A DNA stretch of 60,482 bases, filler included, from Hausera hauseri (taxonomy: Eukaryota): the NCBI GenBank assembly GCA_046269625.1. It is 12 parts of 12 records of this genome, joined end to end, with 100 filler letters (N's around TTAATTAATTAA, not from the genome) between each part and the next. Parts side by side here need not be neighbours in the genome. Positions count along the whole stretch, not along the records: positions 31,469 to 36,583 come from JBJURY010331160.1; positions 36,684 to 40,632 come from JBJURY010864409.1; 10 more parts are not named here. One strand, given 5' to 3'. Numbering within the stretch: the first letter of the stretch is position 1; every line of letters starts with the position of its first letter. Below the pieces are notes generated by a model. It was not told the DNA's origin. It ran no database searches and saw only the letters and a list, made by a program, of their open reading frames with translations. Positions 729-40,732 of this stretch are shown here, piece by piece. The position numbers were made by a program, and so were the translations under genes.

Positions 729-3700
729 GTGTCCTCCCCGGAAATTCGAATTAACGGGCATGAAATATCGGCGTCTAAACGCCCAAAAGTTGCATCAAAC
801 TGTTTCGGAACAGTAATAGAAGGAAGACCCTTCGCCAAAATCATCATTGAAGGCTGGGAAGTTTACGCATTAATCGATACAGGTTCTGAGATGTCTTACA
901 TTAAAAATGATTCAATACCCCAAACGCTAAGAGGACAATTATACCCACCATCTACGAAGGACCCAGGAAGTACAGGAGCTTTTGGCCAAATGTCGAGACC
1001 TATGTTCAAATAGAGCTCAGAATTTCAAATAGTTGAACAGTTTTTCCGTCATGAACTTGCAGTTATGGAACAATTAACTGACGATGTAGTTTTAGGGTGT
1101 GATATACTCAAGAGACTTGCATACAGGAAAATTAATAGAAATCAGACCAAATAAAGGCGTAAAAAACGCTAAGGATAAAAAATTTGGAGAAATGTGGATA
1201 CTAATAGATGAAAATATTCCACCGAGAACAGAGATAATAATTTACGCGCAAATTCAACAAGATGACGATCAACCGGTATATTTCGAACCAAAAGCGACAT
1301 TAAATCCGAATATAATACTCAGTAACATACTGACAAGAGTACAATCCGGTCGTGTACCGATCAGAATAGCAAATAATGCACCGACCTCCGTCAAGCTTCA
1401 TGCTTATACTATTTAAGAAATACCTATAGAGTATCGTCTATAACTATTGAAGAAAAGCCTTACATGTGTGCCGAATTCCCACCTCATGTCTAAACTAAGT
1501 TTTCACCTGAATCCTACTACCGATTTTATGAATTGTTGTGCCGCTATAAATCAATCATTGCTAAAGACCACGAAGATATTGGTAGAGTAAAAACATTAAA
1601 ATTGGCTATCCCGCTTAAGAAAAAGCCTGGGTCAAATGAAGAAATAGATCTTGAGGACCAAAAGATGCCGAAATGGTATCCTCCGCCACATTCACTAAGG
1701 CCCGAGCTAACAAAAGAAGTCGAACGGATGCTTAAAGCCGATATAATTAGGCCCAGTTCTAGATCTTGGTATTCACCAATCATCATGGTTAAAAAGAAAG
1801 GTACTACAAAACATCGATATTGTATCGACTACAGAGCATTGAATAATCTTATGATGAAAGATTCTTTTCCATTGCCATCAGTAAAAGAGGCTCTATACAG
1901 ACTCTCAGATGCAAAATGGTTTACCACTCTGGATTTACAATTCGGATATTGGCAAGTAGAAATCGAGGACGAATATCGATATAAAACAGCGTTCAAGACA
2001 CATGATGGCGTCCTTGAATTTAATGTCATGCCATTCGGTATTACTACCAGACCAGCTATTTTTACAAGAATGATGAATAAAATGTTAATGGGACAAGACC
2101 ATACTTTTGCATACTTAGATGACGTAATGATAGCGTCAAAAACAGAAGAGGAACACTTGAGGGATATTGAACACGCTGATGCGACTGGAACAGGCCGGAT
2201 TGAAATTAAATGCGAAATGTAAATGGGCTCAAAACGCAGTATCCTACCTTGGCCATATAGTTGGAGAAGGAGGATAAAAACCAGATAAATCATTATTGAA
2301 CAAAATATCAGATTGCATGGAGCCACAAAATCAGAAGTATTTAAGGCATTGGCTAGATCTATGGATATTATGCCACTTATGTGCCGGACTACTTGAAAAT
2401 AAATGCATCCTTGTATCGTCTATATGAAAAAGGAATTAAATGGAAGTGGACGGACGTCGAACATAAAGCTTTGGACGAAATGAAGAACGTATTAATAAGT
2501 GAACCAGTTTTACTATATCCAGACATTAACTTACCCTTTATAATCAAGACAGATGCCAGTAAAGAAGGTATTGGATATGAATTAGCGCAGAAAAGAGAAG
2601 ATGAATAATTAGAACACCAAACTGCTTATAGAGGACGCTCCTTGAAGAAGGCCGAGAAAAACTATTTCGTTACTGAATTAGAAACTCTAGCTGTAAAAGA
2701 AGCGCTTCGACATTTCAACGTTTACATGTACGGGCAGAAAATTATAATTGTCACTGATCACAAAGCCGTCACTCTTTAAAAGGCCAAGCAAATAACCCGA
2801 CATGCAGATTTAACAGATGGATTGAAGAAATTTCTAGATACAATATCGAATTCCAGTATAAGCCAGGAAATTAACATGTAGATGCCGATGCACTATCAAG
2901 ATTAAAGACCAAAACAAGTGCAATAACTGTAATGAAGAAAAGTCAGCTTGAAGAAGTAATAGATCGCCAACGTGCCTTAATGTTAGATAAAGCGATTAAA
3001 ATCTCAACCGAACAAAGAAAGAATAGAATTATCCAGCAGATTATAGAATTTGCTGAGGAAGACATAATACCAAAAGGACGACAATTAAAAAAACATCTAT
3101 GTAGACACGGACACAAATATTGCGTCCTGAACAACAAGAACCTCGAAAACCTTCTATATTATGAGCGAAAAGGAAGAAACTGACAGTTATTCCGAAAAAC
3201 TTACGAATTGAAGTTTTGATGTCGGAACATGATGTATATTTGACCGGACACATGTCCTGGAAGAAAACATTAGAAAGAATATTGAATAAATACTTTTGGC
3301 CCAGAATCTATATTGATGTAAAGAATTGGGTGAATGCTTGTGAAGTATGCGAGACCAAACAAAAGAAGACGAAAAATTACATGTCGGAACTGAAACCAAT
3401 CGACGCACCTGGCAGACCCATGCAGGCCATGTCAATGGATATCATAGGACCACTACCTACGACTCATAAGAATAATAATTATCTTAACTTGTATTGATCG
3501 ACTAACTCATTTTGTCGAGTTGATAGCGTTAATTGATCAAAAGGCAGAAACTTTGGCAGAAGCTGTAATAGGAAGAATCATTTGATGATATTGACCGCCA
3601 GACCAAATATTAACAGATCGAGGAAGAAATTTTACAAGTGAACTATTCGAGAAGATTATTAAAATATTTGAAATTGAACGGTTAACTACTACCGCGTATC

Positions 3701-4300
3701 ACCCTCAGTGTAATGGAATGGTTGAACAAATGAATGCAACTGCCATACGCATACTATCAACAGTAGTAGCTAAGGACCAAAAAGATTGGGACGAATTTTT
3801 AGAAGGAACTTAGTTTGCAATCAATACCACAGCACATCCGGCAACAAGATTTATGCCATTCTTCATGATGTATGGATGTGAAGTTGTTACCCACAGACTT
3901 AGGAATGATGCCATACACGGTCAATTCCAACGATTTAGAACAAAACTTCGCAGAAGTATTACAGACGCAACTACAAAAGTGTTGGGAAATCGCCAAGGAG
4001 CTATCCCACAAATATCAAGAACAGTTTAAAAAGCAATATGATAAGAAACCGAAACCGCATGATTTAGAACAAGGAAATTGGGTTTATGTACATTATACAG
4101 TAGCTAAGAAAGGTACGTCATTAGAACTGACTCGTACAGGCAGAGGACCGTACGAAGTTACTAAAGTTACGCCAACTACGGTGTATTTCAACAAGAATGG
4201 AAAGGAAGAAATCGATCAGTACAAAGAGTCGTTAAGACGGAGATACGGCCCAATGAACGTTACAATTTATGTCAATGCGAGAAAAAAATTTCCTCAATAA
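729..4300 (+). mobile_element. pol: Ty3/gypsy LTR retrotransposon pol, degenerate (PR-RT-RNaseH-INT)
   Basis: Protease ALIDTGSEMS; RT RYCIDYRALN, TLDLQFGYWQV, VMPFG, AYLDDV; RNase H TDASKEGIG; integrase H..GH..WPRI..CEVC and MDIIGPLP. Gypsy domain order with many stops and frameshifts. Probable gag remnant at 1-700. Confidence 0.95.
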
Positions 4301-4685
4301 TTGCTAGACCGATATCATACGTTCAGATAGTTTTAGCGCTACGATTAATTGCTTCTTATATCCCAAGAACACAAACTCAATGGTGGGACGATGAAACTAC
4401 GCTAGGAGACGTATATGGAATTCGCAAGAGCGGATCAAAGCCGAAATTTATTATAAAGGAAAACAAACCAATGGCCGAAGAGATACAGAAACGAGAAGAC
4501 ACTATTTTGTTACAATCAATGAAGGTTCATTACTTTTCGCCCGACTCTGTGTGTTGGATTTAAAACTTGGAGACCATATCACTATTTCGGAAGATTTCAA
4601 GTTGTACTATAGGATGTAGCAACAAAAGAAGTAAAAAACTGCGATTTTGAACCCGGAGATTATACACAGTGCTGCGACATAGATT
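4255..4685 (+). pseudogene. Possible env-like extension after the integrase
   Basis: Frame reads ERYNL..., then hydrophobic ISYVQIVLALRLIASYIPRTQT-QWWDD, and later the Cys-rich NCDFEPGDYTQCCD. Truncated by the contig end. Confidence 0.4.
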
Positions 4686-4785
4686 NNNNNNNNNNNNNNN
4701 NNNNNNNNNNNNNNNNNNNNNNNNNNNNNTTAATTAATTAANNNNNNNNNNNNNNNNNNNNNNNNNNNNNNNNNNNNNNNNNNNN
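4686..4785. other. Artificial contig spacer (N44-TTAATTAATTAA-N44); the same spacer occurs at 9243, 13586, 20687, 26438, 31369, 36584, 40633, 45540, 52104 and 56420
   Basis: Identical 100-nt spacer with a six-frame stop 12-mer occurs 11 times. A separate 10-N scaffold gap lies at 21015-21024. Confidence 0.98.
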
Positions 4786-5005
4786 AAATGCAATATTTTA
4801 CATTAAGGATTAAATTGATGGACAAAGGTTTACACAACTCCATTCAGACTTTCCATAGTTGCGAATGACGACGCATTCAACAACATTGAACAACTCGCTG
4901 ACAATGGTGCCTGACAAAATCCAATGTCCATATCGTGATCATGGACCACATTGTGCTTACACAAAATGTTTATGGCTTTGTACTGACTTTGTTTCATGCA
5001 AATAA
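4786..5005 (+). pseudogene. 3' end of Polinton DEDD-like exonuclease gene (paralog of 9344-9800)
   Basis: IFYIKD...CPYRDHGPHCAY; collinear DNA similarity to 9585-9800. Confidence 0.65.
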
Positions 5006-5121
5006 ATAAATATATGTACGTATTTCCTTCTTTCTGTAAATAATGATCATGTCATGTTTAGCAGTATTGGTCAATTAAATAATTCAAAAACCATAAATAC
5101 GTGCAGGTTATAATAATAATA

Positions 5122-5489
5122 ATGGAAACTGTACACATTTATTACGAATGACATCAGTAAAGTGAAGGTAATTTGTATCACGGTTATAACAGACAATACT
5201 CACAAAGTAAATGTCTATTGTTTACAATGAAAACAAATCGGTATGAACAAATTTGATAGTTGACAGTGGTTTCGTGTTGAGTAACGATATCCGAGATACA
5301 TCGTCGGTTTTTCTTAAAGGAAATATGGCGAAAATTGTCAGTTTGCATTGCGGGGAAACAGCGGCAGCAAAATTAGTTTTGCCACCGGAAGGATCTAAAG
5401 GCCATCTAACATTGAAGTTGAAATGATACAAGGGTCTGTACGGCGTTAAATCACCAATATGGAAACTGGGGAAGTTTACTATGATTTAA
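5122..5489 (+). pseudogene. Polinton accessory region: RING-gene remnant (METVHIYYE*) plus internally deleted unknown ORF
   Basis: Collinear with 10356-11009 (LSNDIRDTSSVFLKGNMAKIVS...KGHLTLKLK), lacking roughly 10490-10770. Confidence 0.7.
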
Positions 5490-5800
5490 CCGACTTACTT
5501 TGTGTGTTTTTGTGATTTTAGTTTTTCTCCGATCAATATATAAATTTAATCATTGTTTGTTTTCTCGTACAAGGTTGTTGTTTTACTTTTACTTCTATCA
5601 TACGTTATAATAATAGGTTAAGTAAGTAACCGAAAACAAAACACAAAAGATATTGAACAAATTACATTATTAACATTGACACAAAACAATGCACAAAAGA
5701 TAATCATTGTCAATAATTGCCACAATATCCAGACTAGATTGAATTGTCTGTATCTGACCTGATCTGATCTGACACCACCGAAAATATTTTATTTCAACCT

Positions 5801-8800
5801 TCAATGTCTATACGCCCCATTTTTATTCCGCCTCACCCACTTTCGCTTATCATTGTTGTATGACAAAGCGACTTTCGCACTAGTTATTGTATACAGCTGG
5901 TGCTCAATCGATCGGATGACCGTTTGAGACACAACAGTTTTTGATTGTCTTTGTTCTTCTTCTTCTTCATAGACACGGCGATGATCACGGCGGTTTATTT
6001 CCGTCTGGGCCAACTGAATTCCTTTGGCGCCCATTTTTGGTCCACAGTCGGTTAAAAGTCTACAACAATTTGTCGTAGAAATATGCATCCCTGTTAGTGA
6101 ACCCGACCTTCACTTTTATCCTTGAAGCATCCGATTTTGTTTGTGATGGCGCTGATGTACAAAGTGTGATACTGTAGGTAATTGGACGTGTCCAGTAATC
6201 CATCTGCCATCATTTGCCGCCGTATTTGTTTGCGATTGAGGTTATGCAGTTCGAAGAAAAAACTATCTGTGTCACCGGCAATTATATTGATCCTGCATCC
6301 ACTGCCTCCGCCAAACATTTGCCGGTATCGTGCCAAATCGCGATACTGCAGCTTATACATTTACAACTTGCTCAGATCCAATACCACTTGTCTGATATAA
6401 CTTGGCAAGTTTAGTACGACTTCTTCCCTGTTTAAAAGCACGGCAACCAATCCGTAGGAAATGTGCATTTACCACCAAAACTGCTCCTTACTCGTGTTCG
6501 TGACCAACCGCTTTTCGCTATTGCACAGGTGTACATCGAGCCGATTTTTCAGATTCTCCATTGTTTTCCATAGAGAGAATTATTTTTCGGTTTGGGATAG
6601 TCTTTTTCAAACTATGTACAAGCTGCTGCTCGTTTTTCCGAATTCCGACTGATATACGGCTTGAATATGGGAGCCTGTGCAAATCGGATTGCGCAATGAA
6701 GCTGTGTGACGCGTACACCCAACAACATGTAAAATTGCAACAGGTGCTAACGAACTATGTAATTTTGCTTAAGCTCATGCGTCATAAGCAGCTTCTTCAC
6801 CTTTGAGCCCGGCGGACGTTGGATGATTGGTCTGACCGGCAGTTCATCCAAAAAGTCACGCAGCTCATCTAATACCACGAGATCAACTTCCATCAGGTAT
6901 CGAATTGAGCTGTTTTCTGTTGTGTTTGCTCTCGGCAGATTTTCTATTATGTCGTCCAGCTCTTGCTTGTCTACTATCCATTCGAATGAACTGTACGGTA
7001 AGGGTTGTGAAAGCGCCCAGCCGTACAGGTTATTAATGCCGATACACAACAGTGATGTGGAATCATCGCTGGTTACTTGATGCTTGTTAACATCAAACAT
7101 TCGGTACATTTCCGGGTCTTGCAATAGCTTGATATCCCGATCCAGTAACATCAGAGCTGATGCCCAACTCATTCCGGGTATTGAGTAAAAGTTGAGTGGC
7201 TTCAGTCTATCTTCTGTCAACCCTTTAGCTCGAATTGCCTGAAACATATCGGCTAACAAGTACACATTCAATTTCAGATAGTAAAGCATGTACTCCAACA
7301 GGTTTCTGCAGTCAAGCTCTGCCCAAAACAATTGTGCTTTGTGATATTCTTCTTCTGTTATACTGGGCCATTGTGGCGGTAATTCATCAGTCGTCTGGAG
7401 CCGCTCGTACTATATCGCAAAGTCATACGGGAATATGCCTTTGCTACGCGTTACATGCACAGGGAACTAAGTCATTGCTAGCGGCACATTTGGTAAGGAA
7501 TTTACCTGCTTTGACAGAGATTCATGGAGAAATTAAGATGAATCAAGAAATCATACCTGGAACCGGTTTATACGAGCAGGAAGTGATAGGCATTTCTCCA
7601 TCGTAGTCGGAATTACGGATAGTTCCCAGTTCGGAAATCCACTTATTACCCATTTCAAAATATGGTGACAATCATAACTCCTGAAGTTATTAAATACCAC
7701 CAGTAGGAACGGCCGCAAACGCCTTGCCAAATTGCATGAATTGCATGCTGTTCCCAAGTATCGACCGGTAAAATGATCGTGATCCGATACGAATTGTTCC
7801 TGCGCATCAAAGGGTAATATTTTTTTGGCACAGATAACATTCGTCGGTGGCTGCAAACATTAACAGTTCATATTCGTCTGTCCACATCAAGGGTTTGTTG
7901 CTATTTCTACTCTACTAGAATGCAATTTGCGTTTTTACTATTGTTTCCAAGTGACGCAGGAAATCACGGATACACTTCCAGCCGTGAAAAACGTAATACT
8001 ACAGTTGATCAGTGGCTTTTATTGGGACTAACAACATACCGACATCGATTGGAACGAGCTTTTGATTATATACATTTTGCCGTGGTAGAAATGCTTCAAT
8101 GTCAGCACACATCACGTATGCCGGACTATCGAATTTTGACCAGTCACTGAATCTCAGCTCCTTTTTGATTGCCATGACGAACATTGTGGTTTTCGAGGAA
8201 TTTTGTCTGCACAGAGTGACATGTTTGTCCCATTTTATTTCTGATCTGAATTCGTGAAGACATACGGGACAACATTTACATCGTACAGGCTTTTTGATAA
8301 ACTGGTCATGTTCCATGTTCAACAGTCTGTCCAAATTTGTCACGGCCACGAAATGGAGTTTTTCCTTTTGTTTTAACAGCAACAAATTTATTGGGCGGCC
8401 ATTTGGGTTCCGACTACGATAGGTTATATGCACATAAGGATTTTTGTAAATTTTTCCATCCGCAGGTATTTCTATTATTGTGTTGTCCTGGAATACGTTG
8501 ATTGCCAGTGTCGTATTACGCCGCTCAAATGTCGGCTTGGATTTCAGTTTCATCGGCATCTAGCACCCATCGTAATTTAATTCGGAAAAATATTTCTGAT
8601 ACTGTTTTAGACTATATGCACTATGCCTGTCCACTTCGTCATATTTCAATACCGCCAGAACATTGTAAAGAAAACAGTATTAGTTGTTAGTATTTTTTAC
8701 ATTCACTACCGCCAGAGACTGCTTCAGAGCTGCGGGTGTCGGTATGAATTATCGTCTAGACAAATATATTATGTTACTCGACTTTGTTAAGATAAAGCCG

Positions 8801-36519: not shown

Positions 36520-37302
36520 TAAATTAAAAAATTACAATTTGAATAAATCCAGAATAAGTAATATTCTAAATTCTACTTATAAANNNNNNNNNNNNNNNNN
36601 NNNNNNNNNNNNNNNNNNNNNNNNNNNTTAATTAATTAANNNNNNNNNNNNNNNNNNNNNNNNNNNNNNNNNNNNNNNNNNNNTCCTTATTCTGCCCTCT
36701 CCTTTTACAAAAAGATAAATTTCTCCCAGAAATATCTTTTTCAAACTACTATATTAACTTAAGTCTCTACTTATGTAACCCCGGTAACAAAATGTATACA
36801 ACAACTTTATTACTGGATCTAAATGATCTTAATCTGTACGTATATACACCAACTCAAAATTATTTGCTTTCGCAAGAAATCTGTGATACCCAACTTTGAA
36901 AATATTAATACTACTTGGTCATAAAATCGGGAACTTAATCTAGAGTTAAGGAACTCGTACTCAGCAATCGTTATATTAGGAATCTGATACTTCAGTTTAC
37001 AGTCATATTATCTCCCACGTTAAGTATACGAGCCTTTGCAAATCAACTTAATGTTAATGGGAACTCTATCAGATCTATATGATTAAATAGTTATCTCAAC
37101 CCCTTATTCTTAAATTGTGAATGCATCATGTCTGCTTACTTCTGGACATCTATGATCCTCGACTGCTACTTCATCAACGACTAACAACTTCATCAACTAC
37201 TAACTACTTCTCATTTGTCACCTATTTGCATCAACTTTTTTTTTTCCATTCTCATCTCTTCTTTCAGTTACAATTCATCTGTACTCATCTGCCGCAACTG
37301 TC

Positions 37303-38187
37303 TTAAATCATTGCCGAAGCAAACTGGTACCCTGTTCGAAGGCTATTCCACATTCGACTAACGACATTTGTTTCCACCTTATGTGTCTTTCGTCCGACAC
37401 TTTCAACAGTGTCCGGTGGTCGTGACCTTGTTTGCAAATCAACTGTATCTCTATGCTTCCTTATGACTTTCTCTTGTTTAATACGCCCACTCTTCTTCCT
37501 AACGTTATCTCCACATTGAGTCAAAGTGTCCGCATACAGCTTCTCTACACCTTGTAAAGCAGAATCCTTTCCTTGATACCTCACATGTCTATCTTCACTA
37601 GCTTGACAACTTACTTCCCTCATTTCGCACATTAACTGTCGAATATCTGCCAATTCGTTATCCGTTGGAGCAGAAAACATGTGAAACTCTTGAATTCTCG
37701 CTTCTATTGCTGCTTGAGAACGTTTACACTGTTCATGAACTTCGAGAACCTGTCGATCCATCTCATTCGTGGCTGCTATGGCATCCTCATGAACCTCGTG
37801 ACTAACAATAATGTGATCAACCTCATGTGATTTCCTCTCGGGACGTCTAACTTGATCAACCTGTTTGACACTAACATTCGCCTGCAATTCAGCCATTTCG
37901 ATGTAATTATCAAATAACTGCAGCGCTAACTCCTCAAGTGCACGTGCTTTGGGTAGTAAATCGATGTGGAACTTTTCCTCCAACATGTGTCGTACTTGTT
38001 TAGCAGAGAGGGTGGAAAGATCGGCTGCCTCAAAAATGCTTTCAATAGCTGCTGTTAACTGTTCGGTATTGGGCTCAATACTCCTCTTATACACACGAGC
38101 GTTTCTCAGACTCATTTCTGTAACCAACCTGTGTCTTCGATGCGTAATATCATCCATAGCATCTGGAACATGTTTGCTTGCCATCAA
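37303..38187 (-). CDS. DEK-C-like domain plus coiled-coil protein (294 aa), probably a frameshifted continuation of the 532-aa ORF
   Basis: PNTEQLTAAIESIFEAADLSTLSAKQVRHMLEEKFHIDLLPK fits the DEK C-terminal pattern (P.D.EL..AI..IL..ADL..VT.KQVR..LE..F..DL..K). The frame stays open back to about 38250. Confidence 0.75.
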   Translation of the reverse strand: MMASKHVPDAMDDITHRRHRLVTEMSLRNARVYKRSIEPNTEQLTAAIESIFEAADLSTLSAKQVRHMLEEKFHIDLLPKARALEELALQLFDNYIEMAELQANVSVKQVDQVRRPERKSHEVDHIIVSHEVHEDAIAATNEMDRQVLEVHEQCKRSQAAIEARIQEFHMFSAPTDNELADIRQLMCEMREVSCQASEDRHVRYQGKDSALQGVEKLYADTLTQCGDNVRKKSGRIKQEKVIRKHRDTVDLQTRSRPPDTVESVGRKTHKVETNVVSRMWNSLRTGYQFASAMI

Positions 38188-38191
38188 ATCA

Positions 38192-39790
38192 TTAGCCTGT
38201 ACTGGTTTCTTTCTTTTCTGTATCTCTGTTCTGCTCCCACTGCAATACTTCTATCTGCTCCACACCCTTGCAACAACTTTCCTCTGTCAATGCACTGGCA
38301 TTCGCATGTTCATGCCACGTCCAGGTCGGATAATCCGAAAGAATATCCTTGCACAAGTCCATATACCATTGCTTAATACACTTTACCTCATATGTGGTAT
38401 CTGAATATGCTTGATACAAACGGTCTAAAGCCTTTTTCGTAAACTTTCCTTTTTCGATAATCGCACACCAAACGTCCTGACATCCCGATATCAAGTCTAA
38501 AGACAATAGCAACTCATGTTCACCTGTAGGTAAGACTTGCGTTTCGAGCTTTTTAACATATTTTCTCACTTTATCTCGATGTAGATCCGAAGTTTTGATC
38601 AAACTACACATGTCATGTTTAAGGTTTATGTATTTCTCGTCTATCTTATGCTTTTGTTTACCAATTGTACTTAAGCTGTCTTGCAATTCTAAAAGTAGTG
38701 TCTCTTTTTCTAACAATTGCTTTCGCAGATTGTCTACTTCTATAACATTTATCGTGTTGGTGTCTAATCTTTCTTTTAATTCTTGATTATCGTATCTTAA
38801 TTGCTTATTTTGTATCTTTAAGTTCTCTATGATTTCTACAAGTTCTTTAGCTTTGTGATTTAATTGTTCTACATGGCCTTGTAAATTTACAATTATCTGC
38901 TTATTCGCTTTGTCTGTTTCTGTCATAACCTCAACTTCTTTATTCTTATTGTTCGCCTTGTCCCGAATTTCTTCTCGCTTACTAGACGCACTAAGTTTTG
39001 TAGTAGCTTCTTCAGACTGCTTGTTCAGTGTTTCATGAGCTTGGTGGAAAGATCTATCAACACCGGCTTCCATGACTCTGTCATTGTCCGACAAGTCTGA
39101 TTCCGTAATGCCGATCCCTGTATCTGTAGAACCATCCATTTCTTTCTCATTTGCCTCATTTGTTACCCTATTTCGCTCCACATGTATGTTCGAAACTGAT
39201 TGCATGGGACCGTTAACTACCTTTTTACTTTTAACTTTCAAGAAAGACTCGTTAACGTGCATACTATGTCGTATCTTGTCCTTCAGCTCTACTGATTTTT
39301 GTCTCGCATGCACCTTAAGTTCGGAATAAGTTTTCGTATCTTCTAATATATTCTGATCAGTAGTAAGCTCAGCGTCACTGTCTAATAATGCTCCTAGATG
39401 TTTAATGTTCTCATGGGGTTCAAAATGTTCTGATCTTAAATTAGTTTCAAGTAGTGAGCTACCCTGATTTTTGCATTCTCTATCTTGACTCCAACATTTC
39501 GGCAGTTCTAAGTCATTACAATTCCTATTATTATTCTTCATTTGAGACTGTAAATCTTGAACCTTATCAACTAGCTGTGTCATTTTAATCAGCACTTTCC
39601 TTAATGTGGGCTCATAGCTAGGCTTAGGGAACCAATAACAATTACTTGCATAGTGTCCGTATCTACCACATGTAAAGCATTTGACTGGAAGGTATCTCTT
39701 ATGTTCGAAGGACTGTAGTCGAGCATCACTAGTGCAATTCGGACTGGACCCAGGGGACAATGCTAACAGTGCGTCAGCCTTACAAACCAT
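38192..39790 (-). CDS. Gag-like CCHC zinc knuckle plus long coiled-coil protein (532 aa)
   Basis: CFTCGRYGHYASNC at 39679-39638; heptad-rich K/E/L central region; no internal stops. Confidence 0.8.
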   Translation of the reverse strand: MVCKADALLALSPGSSPNCTSDARLQSFEHKRYLPVKCFTCGRYGHYASNCYWFPKPSYEPTLRKVLIKMTQLVDKVQDLQSQMKNNNRNCNDLELPKCWSQDRECKNQGSSLLETNLRSEHFEPHENIKHLGALLDSDAELTTDQNILEDTKTYSELKVHARQKSVELKDKIRHSMHVNESFLKVKSKKVVNGPMQSVSNIHVERNRVTNEANEKEMDGSTDTGIGITESDLSDNDRVMEAGVDRSFHQAHETLNKQSEEATTKLSASSKREEIRDKANNKNKEVEVMTETDKANKQIIVNLQGHVEQLNHKAKELVEIIENLKIQNKQLRYDNQELKERLDTNTINVIEVDNLRKQLLEKETLLLELQDSLSTIGKQKHKIDEKYINLKHDMCSLIKTSDLHRDKVRKYVKKLETQVLPTGEHELLLSLDLISGCQDVWCAIIEKGKFTKKALDRLYQAYSDTTYEVKCIKQWYMDLCKDILSDYPTWTWHEHANASALTEESCCKGVEQIEVLQWEQNRDTEKKETSTG

Positions 39791-40732
39791 TTTGACTGCC
39801 TGTGATCCGCATACAAATGTGTCAACTCAATCTCAAGGTATCTCTTATCCCTGTCTTTACATAAACCCTGTGTCAACACTATTGCCTCACACTATTATCA
39901 CTTAATAGCTTGCCTTGACTACGTCTCAGGAAAATCTCTTCTACAATAAGTCTCACCAATTAGTTTTACATCAGCATTTACATCATGTAACTTCTTGGAA
40001 ACAACAACAGCTTAAATCATAATCATCAGAGTATTCTTAACTCGTGACTTTACAATATGTCAGAACCAACTGTGATTTGGCAACAATTAGCACATTTATC
40101 TTCTGAATAAATACTAACACATCTCAAACTTCTCAACTCAATATATTGCTTCAACGGAATTCGTCTTGTCTCCTCAACTGGGGGATCAATACCATGTGTT
40201 CATCAACTGGGGACTAGGACTAGCCATGGTAAACCGCTTTATCAACAAAAAAACCCACTTATGGCTTATACTTCACTATCCCAATCTTTAGCTCAGCTTT
40301 AAACAAAATCTTTGTCTCAACCTTAACCAAAGTGTTTATCTCAACAAAAGTTCAACAAACTTCTAAACCTCACAACAAAATATTCATACAACTGTCTCGT
40401 CTTGTCTTCACCAGTGTTCACTGTGGCAAGTGTGTGTCAGCTGCGGATCAGCGCCTGTGTCATGGGCATCAATTGGAAAGTGTGTTTGTGATAGCGTCAG
40501 TCATGGGCATCACGTAATAAAAGGGTTGTGTGGTAGGGTCGCCATGAGCATCAATTCACCAGAGGTATTTTCTTCAAGGTTGGTGTGTGATCGAGTGCCT
40601 GAACTCAACAACCGGTTCAGAGAGGCCACTAANNNNNNNNNNNNNNNNNNNNNNNNNNNNNNNNNNNNNNNNNNNNTTAATTAATTAANNNNNNNNNNNN
40701 NNNNNNNNNNNNNNNNNNNNNNNNNNNNNNNN

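What the first reader, a model, noticed from the sequence alone, without database searches (positions are those of the whole stretch)
36684..40632. Pol-less LTR-like element encoding CCHC knuckle, coiled coil and DEK-C-like chromatin domain
Seen: the contig is bounded by an LTR-end/PBS-like signal at one side and a PPT at the other, which is where LTR repeats would break an assembly. It has no protease, RT or integrase. Instead it carries ~830 intron-free codons, far better preserved than the other elements here, with an N-terminal gag-type knuckle, long coiled coils and a DEK-C-like helical domain. Known: DEK-C occurs in DEK, Slingshot and SWIB-type proteins as a DNA/chromatin-associated module; I do not know it as a standard retroelement domain. 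Inference: a non-autonomous retroelement family with a captured chromatin domain (targeting, anti-silencing or parasitising helper particles), or a gag domestication in progress. This is the best candidate for an undescribed system in the window.
Basis: partly seen in the sequence, partly recalled or inferred. Interest (0 to 1): 0.8.

Follow-up and report, generated by a model that had tools for sequence, protein, structure and literature searches.

The report
Pol-less repeat variant with DEK-C frame
This short contig is one copy of a minor, enzyme-less variant of a repeated mobile-element family: an orphan zinc-knuckle/coiled-coil gene sits inside an abundant backbone that already carries a DEK-C DNA/chromatin-binding domain. 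That makes it a moderately interesting parasite-of-a-parasite, not a clearly new system.

Summary
The domain calls hold. On the minus strand there is a 532-codon ORF1 with a canonical CCHC knuckle and long coiled-coil helices. A 294-codon ORF2 follows, and its DEK_C domain passes Pfam's cut-off and matches the DEK and Uaf30 structures. No protease, RT or integrase is present.

- The roughly 830 codons are two ORFs in different frames, not one.
- Contigs from public runs show that the piece is composite. The leader (40632-40221) and the 3' module with the DEK_C frame (38221-36684) have 20-30 times the depth of the ORF1 interior in the best-holding run. In three sister organisms they flank a different interior of at least 3.4 kb. 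DEK_C therefore belongs to the abundant backbone, and ORF1 is the substitution specific to this subfamily.
- ORF2 shows no clear purifying selection between forms (8 synonymous and 17 non-synonymous changes, two of them stops).

The LTR class is unproven. The purine tract at the 3' end is unusual, the 'PBS' could not be tested, and no LTRs or TSD are visible. Neither ORF has a full-length relative in any database searched.

Best reading: the internal region of a non-autonomous recombinant retroelement subfamily that depends on a full-length partner, whose interior could not be fetched.

The parts
40221..40632 (-). Backbone leader, shared and high-depth. The backbone's likely start codon, ACC ATG GCT, is at 40227.
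   Evidence: Depth is 4951-6743 in X1, against about 212 for the interior. The loose end 'before 40247' aligns to the piece down to 40221, including the ATGGCT. In this copy the ATG opens only 13 codons. X3 and X4 contigs diverge at 40593.
40461..40556 (-). Three copies of a 14-nt motif spaced 41 nt apart in the leader. Copy number varies between organisms.
   Evidence: Repeat family D1. X2 and X3 skip 57 nt at 40476-40534.
40283..40345 (-). 24-nt tandem repeat, 2.6 copies, in the leader.
   Evidence: TRF score 77.
38222..40220 (-). Subfamily-specific interior of about 2.0 kb: 430 nt of untranslated sequence plus nearly all of ORF1. It replaces a longer interior found in the common form.
   Evidence: X1 depth is 137-350 here, against 2392-7559 in the flanks. 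X2-X4 depth is 0-4 here, against about 9-36 in the flanks. Contigs of X2-X4 leave the piece at 38221 and near 40221-40247 and run on for 1090-2165 unlike letters. An X1 contig (187 nt, depth 92.5, 2 differences) bridges 38221 (table 8).
38192..39790 (-). ORF1, 532 aa, an orphan protein. Its last 9 codons and its stop lie in backbone sequence, read in a different frame from the backbone's.
   Evidence: No relatives were found. 20 ATGs lie upstream of its start.
39638..39679 (-). CCHC zinc knuckle (C-X2-C-X4-H-X4-C), ORF1 aa 38-51.
   Evidence: Pfam PF00098: 21.9 bits, cut-off 20.8. It is the only such motif in six frames. There is a weak similarity to HIV-1 NC knuckles, E = 0.04.
38591..38962 (-). 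Coiled-coil region of ORF1, aa 277-400.
   Evidence: AF2 helices 277-344 and 349-400, the best-scored part of the model at pLDDT 56-74. Heptad score is at least 0.5 across aa 297-421.
38201..38581 (-). C-terminal helical region of ORF1 (aa 404-530), fold unknown.
   Evidence: Short helices at pLDDT 40-59. No family found.
37303..38187 (-). ORF2, 294 aa, with its first ATG at 38184. It is part of the high-depth backbone. Its frame stays open upstream across the 38221 junction in the common form.
   Evidence: the junction reads TKRARQAALR-QKRKKPVQANDLMASK. Depth. There is no full-length relative among 1.84 billion representatives.
37936..38073 (-). DEK_C domain, ORF2 aa 39-84.
   Evidence: Pfam PF08766: 38.8 bits, E = 8.5e-10. 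All 7 library hits align through or beside this stretch. The model matches 1q1v at rmsd 2.5 over 58 columns, and 7z0o_G.
36684..37302 (-). Backbone 3' untranslated tail, with a 19-nt tandem repeat at 37168-37210. It ends in a polypurine tract at 36706-36684.

Best explanation
The piece is the internal region of one copy of a minor, non-autonomous, recombinant subfamily of a repeated mobile-element family, most likely a retroelement and possibly of LTR type.

The family's backbone has two parts. The first is a leader of about 410 nt that ends at the backbone's start codon (40227). The second is a 1.5-kb 3' module containing a DEK_C-bearing reading frame and a 620-nt tail that ends in a polypurine tract. 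In most copies these parts flank a longer interior (at least 3.4 kb) that probably encodes the replication enzymes.

In this subfamily about 2 kb of foreign, intronless sequence has replaced that interior. It carries ORF1, with a CCHC knuckle, a coiled coil and a helical C-terminal region. It may have come from a co-packaged cellular or other-element RNA by template switching. The swap truncated ORF1's native end, so that it now stops 27 nt inside backbone sequence, read out of frame.

Such copies would be propagated in trans by full-length relatives through the retained end signals. ORF1 would act as an oligomeric nucleic-acid-binding protein. The DEK_C frame, if it is made at all from this RNA (its ATG lies 7 nt after ORF1's stop), would bind DNA or chromatin.

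Shown: the composite structure, the domain identities, the depth contrast, the intact ORFs and the lack of pol. Inferred: the retroelement class, the capture mechanism, trans-mobilisation and the protein functions.
For: Domains: Pfam zf-CCHC and DEK_C both score above their curated cut-offs. The DEK_C fold is supported by a confident model and by matches to 1q1v and 7z0o_G.

ORFs: they are far longer than chance allows.

Composite structure:
- In X1, mean depth is about 4400-6000 for 36684-38267 and 40248-40632, against about 212 for 38268-40247.
- In X2-X4, single contigs cover the flanks at depth about 9-36 and leave the piece at 38221. All three runs show the same loose end there, which is unlike the piece.
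- They also leave near 40221-40247 and continue for 1090-2165 unlike letters.
- An X1 contig bridges the 38221 junction.

Family behaviour: 916 X1 contigs lay on the piece, in identity classes from under 90% to over 99%.

Frames:
- The backbone frame of ORF2 stays open across the junction in the common form.
- ORF1's stop lies in backbone sequence in another frame.
- The backbone ATG at 40227 is conserved in sister organisms but opens only 13 codons here, and 20 ATGs precede ORF1.

Strand and ends: the sense strand is 58% purine, and a purine tract (22 of 25) sits exactly at the 3' contig end.
Against: - No LTRs, TSD, RT, IN or PR were seen anywhere.
- The PBS is unverified.
- An X3 contig runs 97 nt beyond 36684 without breaking. 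This is not what a sharp LTR boundary would usually give in a de Bruijn graph.
- Depth summed over contigs is not a copy number.
- In X2-X4 the backbone may be low-copy.
- ORF1 has no relatives, so neither a cellular nor an element origin is shown.
Confidence: 0.55

Rival explanations
1. One reading: an independent pol-less LTR family whose own evolution captured a DEK_C chromatin domain. ORF1 is its gag, and ORF1 and ORF2 together form one ~830-codon product.
For: The knuckle, DEK_C, lack of pol and PPT-like end are all real.
Against: DEK_C sits in the part shared with a 20-30 times more abundant form that has a different interior. ORF1 and ORF2 are in different frames. No gag capsid profile matches ORF1. 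ORF1's stop lies in out-of-frame backbone sequence.
Confidence: 0.12
2. The element belongs to a different class, and the piece is a deleted or recombinant internal fragment of it. One option is a non-LTR (LINE-like) element, whose ORF1 proteins often combine coiled coils with CCHC knuckles and are followed closely by ORF2 in another frame. Another is a two-ORF DNA transposon.
For: The ORF1 architecture (knuckle plus coiled coil) and the 7-nt gap between ORF1's stop and ORF2's ATG in another frame. No LTR was seen. An X3 contig runs past the 'PPT' end without a break. That LINE ORF1 proteins have these features is established knowledge, not tested here.
Against: No RRM, endonuclease, RT or transposase profile matches. 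There is no poly-A or simple repeat at the 3' end and there are no TIRs in the piece. The knuckle is N-terminal rather than C-terminal.
Confidence: 0.18
3. Host genes or a domesticated gag: a cellular locus encoding a knuckle/coiled-coil protein and a DEK_C protein, repeated only through segmental duplication.
For: Both ORFs are intact. In X2-X4 the backbone appears as single contigs at uniform modest depth. Plants have a domesticated Copia gag fused to DEK_C, PC4 and knuckles (PMC9784723).
Against: Hundreds of diverged contigs in X1 and a 20-30-fold depth excess of the flanks. Differences in ORF2 look near-neutral, with stop codons in the abundant form. No orthologue was found among 1.84 billion representatives. 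ORF1 matches neither PF14223 nor PC4. 20 upstream ATGs precede ORF1.
Confidence: 0.08
4. Assembly chimera: a low-copy ORF1 locus wrongly joined to high-copy repeat ends in a short-read assembly.
For: The sharp depth steps coincide with the junctions.
Against: An independently built Logan contig of X1 (depth 92.5, 2 differences) spans 38221 with 58 and 128 nt on either side. It may, however, come from the same reads as the source assembly. ORF1's end continues smoothly into backbone sequence.
Confidence: 0.05

Closest known systems
Non-autonomous LTR retrotransposons that keep only a gag-like ORF (TR-GAG), or that lost pol and carry foreign sequence (maize Bs1, barley BARE-2)
   Same: No pol. 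They retain leader and 3' signals, carry an intronless ORF between them, and co-exist with more abundant full-length relatives. Bs1 replaced its interior with transduced host gene segments that form a hybrid ORF (PMC13317346). TR-GAG is a recognised class.
   Different: Terminal repeats were not seen here. ORF1 matches no gag capsid family. The origin of the inserted segment is unknown. These classes are described in plants, and the source organism here is unknown.
Plant domesticated Copia gag genes with DEK_C (HadGAG2 / Ctrg10)
   Same: They combine retroelement-type zinc knuckles with a DEK_C domain (PMC9784723).
   Different: Those are single multi-exon host genes with PF14223 gag and PC4 domains. 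Here PF14223 and PC4 are absent, the two domains lie in separate ORFs and frames, and the sequence is a multi-copy repeat.
Retroelements whose polyprotein carries a chromatin-reading module (chromodomain of chromoviral Ty3/gypsy integrases)
   Same: A small DNA/chromatin-binding domain lies near the 3' end of the element's coding region. In the common form the frame is open upstream of it. The chromovirus comparison is established knowledge, not tested here.
   Different: The domain is DEK_C, not a chromodomain. No integrase was seen, so fusion to pol is conjecture.
DEK_C-domain proteins (DEK, Uaf30/Tri1, SWIB-DEK_C proteins)
   Same: The sequence profile and the predicted three-helix fold match.
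   Different: Outside the roughly 55-residue domain there is no similarity to any of them.
LINE ORF1 proteins with coiled coil and CCHC knuckles
   Same: Coiled coil plus knuckle in a first ORF, followed by a second ORF in another frame. This is established knowledge about LINEs.
   Different: No RRM or CTD was detected. The knuckle is N-terminal. ORF2 lacks endonuclease and RT.

Membership tests
LTR retrotransposon (internal region) | Paired long terminal repeats with TG..CA ends | not testable with these tools
   The piece ends before any repeat, and no long direct repeat lies inside it.
LTR retrotransposon (internal region) | Target-site duplication | not testable with these tools
   No flanking DNA is available.
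LTR retrotransposon (internal region) | Primer-binding site complementary to a host tRNA 3' end, next to the 5' LTR | tested here: inconclusive
   TGG lies at 40628-40626, 5 nt from the contig end. No host tRNA was available, and none lies in the piece. The T-loop complement is absent at the expected offset (read from the sequence). TGG occurs 44 times in 3949 nt. Sister-organism contigs differ over these 39 nt.
LTR retrotransposon (internal region) | Polypurine tract next to the 3' LTR | tested here: met
   22 of the last 25 nt are purines, in the top 0.33% of windows. A 12-nt pure run lies at 36706-36695. Its adjacency to an LTR is not shown.
LTR retrotransposon (internal region) | gag (capsid plus nucleocapsid) and pol (PR, RT, RNase H, IN) | tested here: not met
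   Pfam at E <= 1 finds only zf-CCHC and DEK_C, with no gag, PR, RT or IN families. A non-autonomous derivative would be expected to lack pol.
TR-GAG type non-autonomous element | A recognisable GAG domain between terminal repeats | tested here: inconclusive
   Only a knuckle is present (21.9 bits, cut-off 20.8), with no capsid profile. The ORF1 model is of low confidence, pLDDT 44.7. Terminal repeats were not seen.
DEK_C domain (PF08766) | Profile match above the curated cut-off and a matching fold | tested here: met
   38.8 bits against 24.8, covering profile positions 1-46 of 54. The model has pLDDT of about 90. Matches are 1q1v (prob 0.93, rmsd 2.5 over 58 columns) and 7z0o_G (prob 0.98). 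Foldseek E-values are only 0.2-0.4 because the domain is short.
zf-CCHC (PF00098) | C-X2-C-X4-H-X4-C with a profile score above the cut-off | tested here: met
   CFTCGRYGHYASNC scores 21.9 bits against 20.8, which is marginal.
Non-LTR (LINE) element | ORF2 with endonuclease and reverse transcriptase; ORF1 with RRM/CTD or C-terminal knuckles | tested here: not met
   No such profiles match either ORF. The knuckle is at aa 38-51 of 532.
Plant Ctrg10/HadGAG2 domesticated gag | PF14223 Copia gag, DEK_C, PC4 and knuckles in one multi-exon protein | tested here: not met
   PF14223 and PF02229 are absent. The domains lie in two ORFs. The sequence is multi-copy.

The most novel reading that the evidence does not exclude
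The abundant backbone is an autonomous retroelement whose polyprotein ends in a DEK_C domain. That domain would serve as a DNA/chromatin tether for integration or nuclear retention, an undescribed counterpart of the chromoviral chromodomain. The ORF1 subfamily is a parasite of this element: it swapped the enzymes for its own oligomeric knuckle protein but kept the DEK_C module.
Probability: 0.2. Interest if true: 0.6.

Novelty: new variant of a known kind. Interest (0 to 1): 0.38.

Why it matters
Mobile elements that carry chromatin-binding modules choose where they land or how they escape silencing. In the literature I could search, DEK_C appears with retroelement parts only in domesticated plant gag genes. 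A repeat family with DEK_C built into its backbone would add a new kind of tether. Its pol-less offshoot, with an orphan knuckle/coiled-coil protein, would be a workable case of interior replacement and trans-parasitism. The element class and the partner's content are not established, so for now this is a lead and not a discovery.

Tried and rejected
- ORF1 relatives: none found by word-indexed search of the whole protein or of aa 401-532. The ESM Atlas gave 0.75 for the whole protein and at most 0.85 for the part, and those hits were generic coiled-coil proteins. PDB phmmer found only weak NC knuckles.
- ORF2 relatives: a full HMMER scan of 1.84 billion representatives gave 7 hits, the best at 1e-8. 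Six carry DEK_C, and their best stretches match the query in or beside its DEK_C domain; the seventh, P0002, matched aa 125-177 and has no DEK_C. They come from a chytrid, a bee, a spider and unnamed sources, so they give no taxonomic clue. PDB phmmer found nothing.
- Related loci: protein scans of the metagenome and viral collections found nothing. A 20-mer scan of metagenomes gave 18 chance hits with no extended similarity. An alignment query was too weakly conserved to run.
- Rfam and tRNA scans: no hits.
This prevented reading the common form's interior and the sequence beyond the contig ends.
- ORF1 fold: the AF2 model was too uncertain (pLDDT 44.7) for a fold search.
- Programmed +1 frameshift: I looked for a signal in the overlap of about 70 nt and saw no known slippery motif.
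- Gag domestication: rejected because the sequence is multi-copy and changes between forms look near-neutral.
Full report
**What is in the piece**

All coding potential in 36684-40632 is on the minus strand. ORF1 runs 39790..38192 (532 aa) and ORF2 runs 38187..37303 (294 aa, first ATG at 38184). The longest stop-free run is 544 codons, against a maximum of 224 in 300 shuffles. Both ORFs show coding-type base composition by codon position, and the flanking 840 nt and 620 nt do not. ORF2 is in the +1 frame relative to ORF1, with four bases between ORF1's TAA and the TTG that opens ORF2.

**Domains**

- Pfam finds zf-CCHC at ORF1 aa 37-51. The score is 21.9 bits against a cut-off of 20.8, so it is marginal, but the motif CFTCGRYGHYASNC is canonical.
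- Pfam finds DEK_C at ORF2 aa 39-84 (38.8 bits against 24.8, E = 8.5e-10).
- An AF2 model of ORF2, built with a small alignment, reaches pLDDT of about 90 over aa 41-100.
- The only high-probability Foldseek hits for that model are Uaf30 in the UAF complex (7z0o_G, prob 0.98) and the DEK C-terminal domain (1q1v, prob 0.93, rmsd 2.5 over 58 columns). Their E-values are weak (0.2-0.4) because the domain is short.
- ORF1 is predicted all-helical, with two very long helices (aa 277-344 and 349-400) and heptad signal. Overall confidence is low, pLDDT 44.7.
- No protease, RT, RNase H, integrase, transposase or gag capsid family appears at E <= 1.

**No relatives**

- ORF2 was scored against 1.84 billion representative proteins. 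It has only seven hits, the best at 1e-8. Six carry DEK_C, and their best stretches match the query in or beside its DEK_C domain; the seventh, P0002, matched aa 125-177 and has no DEK_C. They come from unrelated organisms.
- ORF1 has no hit by word search, either whole or with aa 401-532 alone. The ESM Atlas gives nothing useful, and the PDB gives only weak similarity to retroviral NC knuckles.
- Metagenome and viral contig scans gave nothing related.

**The piece is composite**

Ten public runs from ten differently named organisms hold parts of the piece, and one (X1) holds 76% of its sampled words. Contigs of four runs were laid on the piece.

- In X1, 916 contigs fit, at identities from under 90% to over 99%. 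This is how a repeat family behaves.
- Summed depth in X1 is about 2400-7600 over 36684-38267 and 40248-40632. It is only 137-350 over 38268-40247, a 20-30-fold step.
- In X2-X4, single contigs cover the same flanks at depth about 9-36, while the interior has depth 0-4.
- Contigs of all three runs leave the piece at exactly 38221 with the same loose end. That loose end is unlike the piece, and the contigs continue for 1501-2165 letters.
- On the other side, contigs continue for 1090-1274 unlike letters. The apparent break at 40247 is an alignment clip, because the loose end still matches the piece down to 40221.
- An X1 contig (depth 92.5, 2 differences) bridges 38221. The junction is therefore not peculiar to the source assembly, although it may rest on the same reads.

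The leader (40632-40221) and the 3' module (38221-36684, which includes the DEK_C frame) form a backbone. That backbone usually flanks a different interior of at least 3.4 kb. The knuckle/coiled-coil ORF1, with 430 nt upstream of it, is a 2.0-kb substitution found in a minor subfamily.

**Details that fit a substitution**

- The sequence ACC ATG GCT at 40227 is conserved in the sister-organism loose end and looks like the backbone's start codon. In this copy it opens only 13 codons.
- Twenty ATGs precede ORF1's start.
- ORF1's last nine codons and its stop lie inside backbone sequence, read in a frame different from ORF2's.
- In the common form the ORF2 frame stays open across the junction: TKRARQAALR, then QKRKKPVQANDLMASK. 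Ten open codons are not significant on their own. They are compatible with DEK_C being the C-terminal part of a longer backbone protein.

**Constraint**

I mapped the 25 listed substitutions between this copy and the abundant form onto ORF2. Eight are synonymous and 17 are not. Random changes would give 21% synonymous. The changes are spread evenly over codon positions (8, 7 and 10). Two create stops, Q238* and W280*. One indel is an in-frame 6-nt deletion. This is at most weak purifying selection. The intact ORFs in this copy indicate that it is young, not that it is constrained.

**Element class**

The sense strand is 58% purine, and the last 25 nt contain 22 purines (top 0.33% of windows). 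A PPT-like tract at the contig end is therefore more than chance. The 'PBS' is a TGG 5 nt from the other end. No host tRNA was available, the expected T-loop complement is absent, and sister-organism contigs differ over exactly these 39 nt. No LTR or inverted repeat is in the piece. An X3 contig runs 97 nt past the PPT end without breaking, which sits uneasily with a sharp LTR boundary. I rate a retroelement of LTR type as the most likely class but unproven. A LINE-like or other class remains open.

**Most likely mechanism**

The piece is a non-autonomous recombinant. The enzyme-coding interior of a DEK_C-bearing element was replaced by an intronless foreign segment. Template switching onto a co-packaged RNA, as in maize Bs1 (PMC13317346), is the obvious route. 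The cis-acting ends were kept, so full-length relatives can propagate the variant in trans. ORF1 would be an oligomeric nucleic-acid binder and DEK_C a DNA/chromatin binder. These functions are inferred from the domain families only.

**Comparison with what is known**

Gag-only and gene-carrying non-autonomous LTR elements (TR-GAG, Bs1, BARE-2) are established. The one published combination of retroelement parts with DEK_C that I found is a domesticated plant Copia gag, HadGAG2/Ctrg10 (PMC9784723). Its defining PF14223 and PC4 domains are absent here.

I classify the finding as a new variant of a known kind. Those facts are the terminal repeats, the partner's enzymes and whether DEK_C is fused to pol.

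Noticed in passing
window 40461-40556: Three copies of a 14-nt motif (CATGGGCATCAATT-like on the + strand) at exact 41-nt spacing in the leader. X2 and X3 contigs skip 57 nt here, so the number of copies varies between organisms. It could be a set of protein-binding sites.
   Followed up: partly
window 38374-39138: Short contigs of the ORF1 interior occur in X2-X4 at 98-100% identity to the piece but at depth of only 2-4, well below the backbone's depth in those runs. They may be rare copies of the ORF1 subfamily or carry-over between samples. I could not tell which.
   Followed up: no
window 38858-39063, 39624-39795, 39885-40043: In X1, besides the main ORF1 contigs (depth about 90-113, 0-2 differences), there are diverged versions at 86-89% identity and depth 5-10. 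These could be older copies or the source gene of the captured segment.
   Followed up: no
window 37476 and 37349: The abundant backbone form has stop codons at ORF2 codon 238 (X1, X2, X3) and codon 280 (X1-X4). Its DEK_C protein would be about 57 residues shorter than in this copy, or it may be decaying.
   Followed up: partly
window 39791-40632: 20 ATG codons, all opening ORFs of at most 14 codons, lie upstream of ORF1's start. Ordinary scanning from a full-length transcript would rarely reach ORF1.
   Followed up: partly
L006, L017, L018 (NKAJ01 contigs): Three contigs of one metagenome assembly share the 20-mer used as a probe but show no further similarity to the piece (blastn empty). The cause is probably an unrelated repeat that contains the word by chance.
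   Followed up: yes
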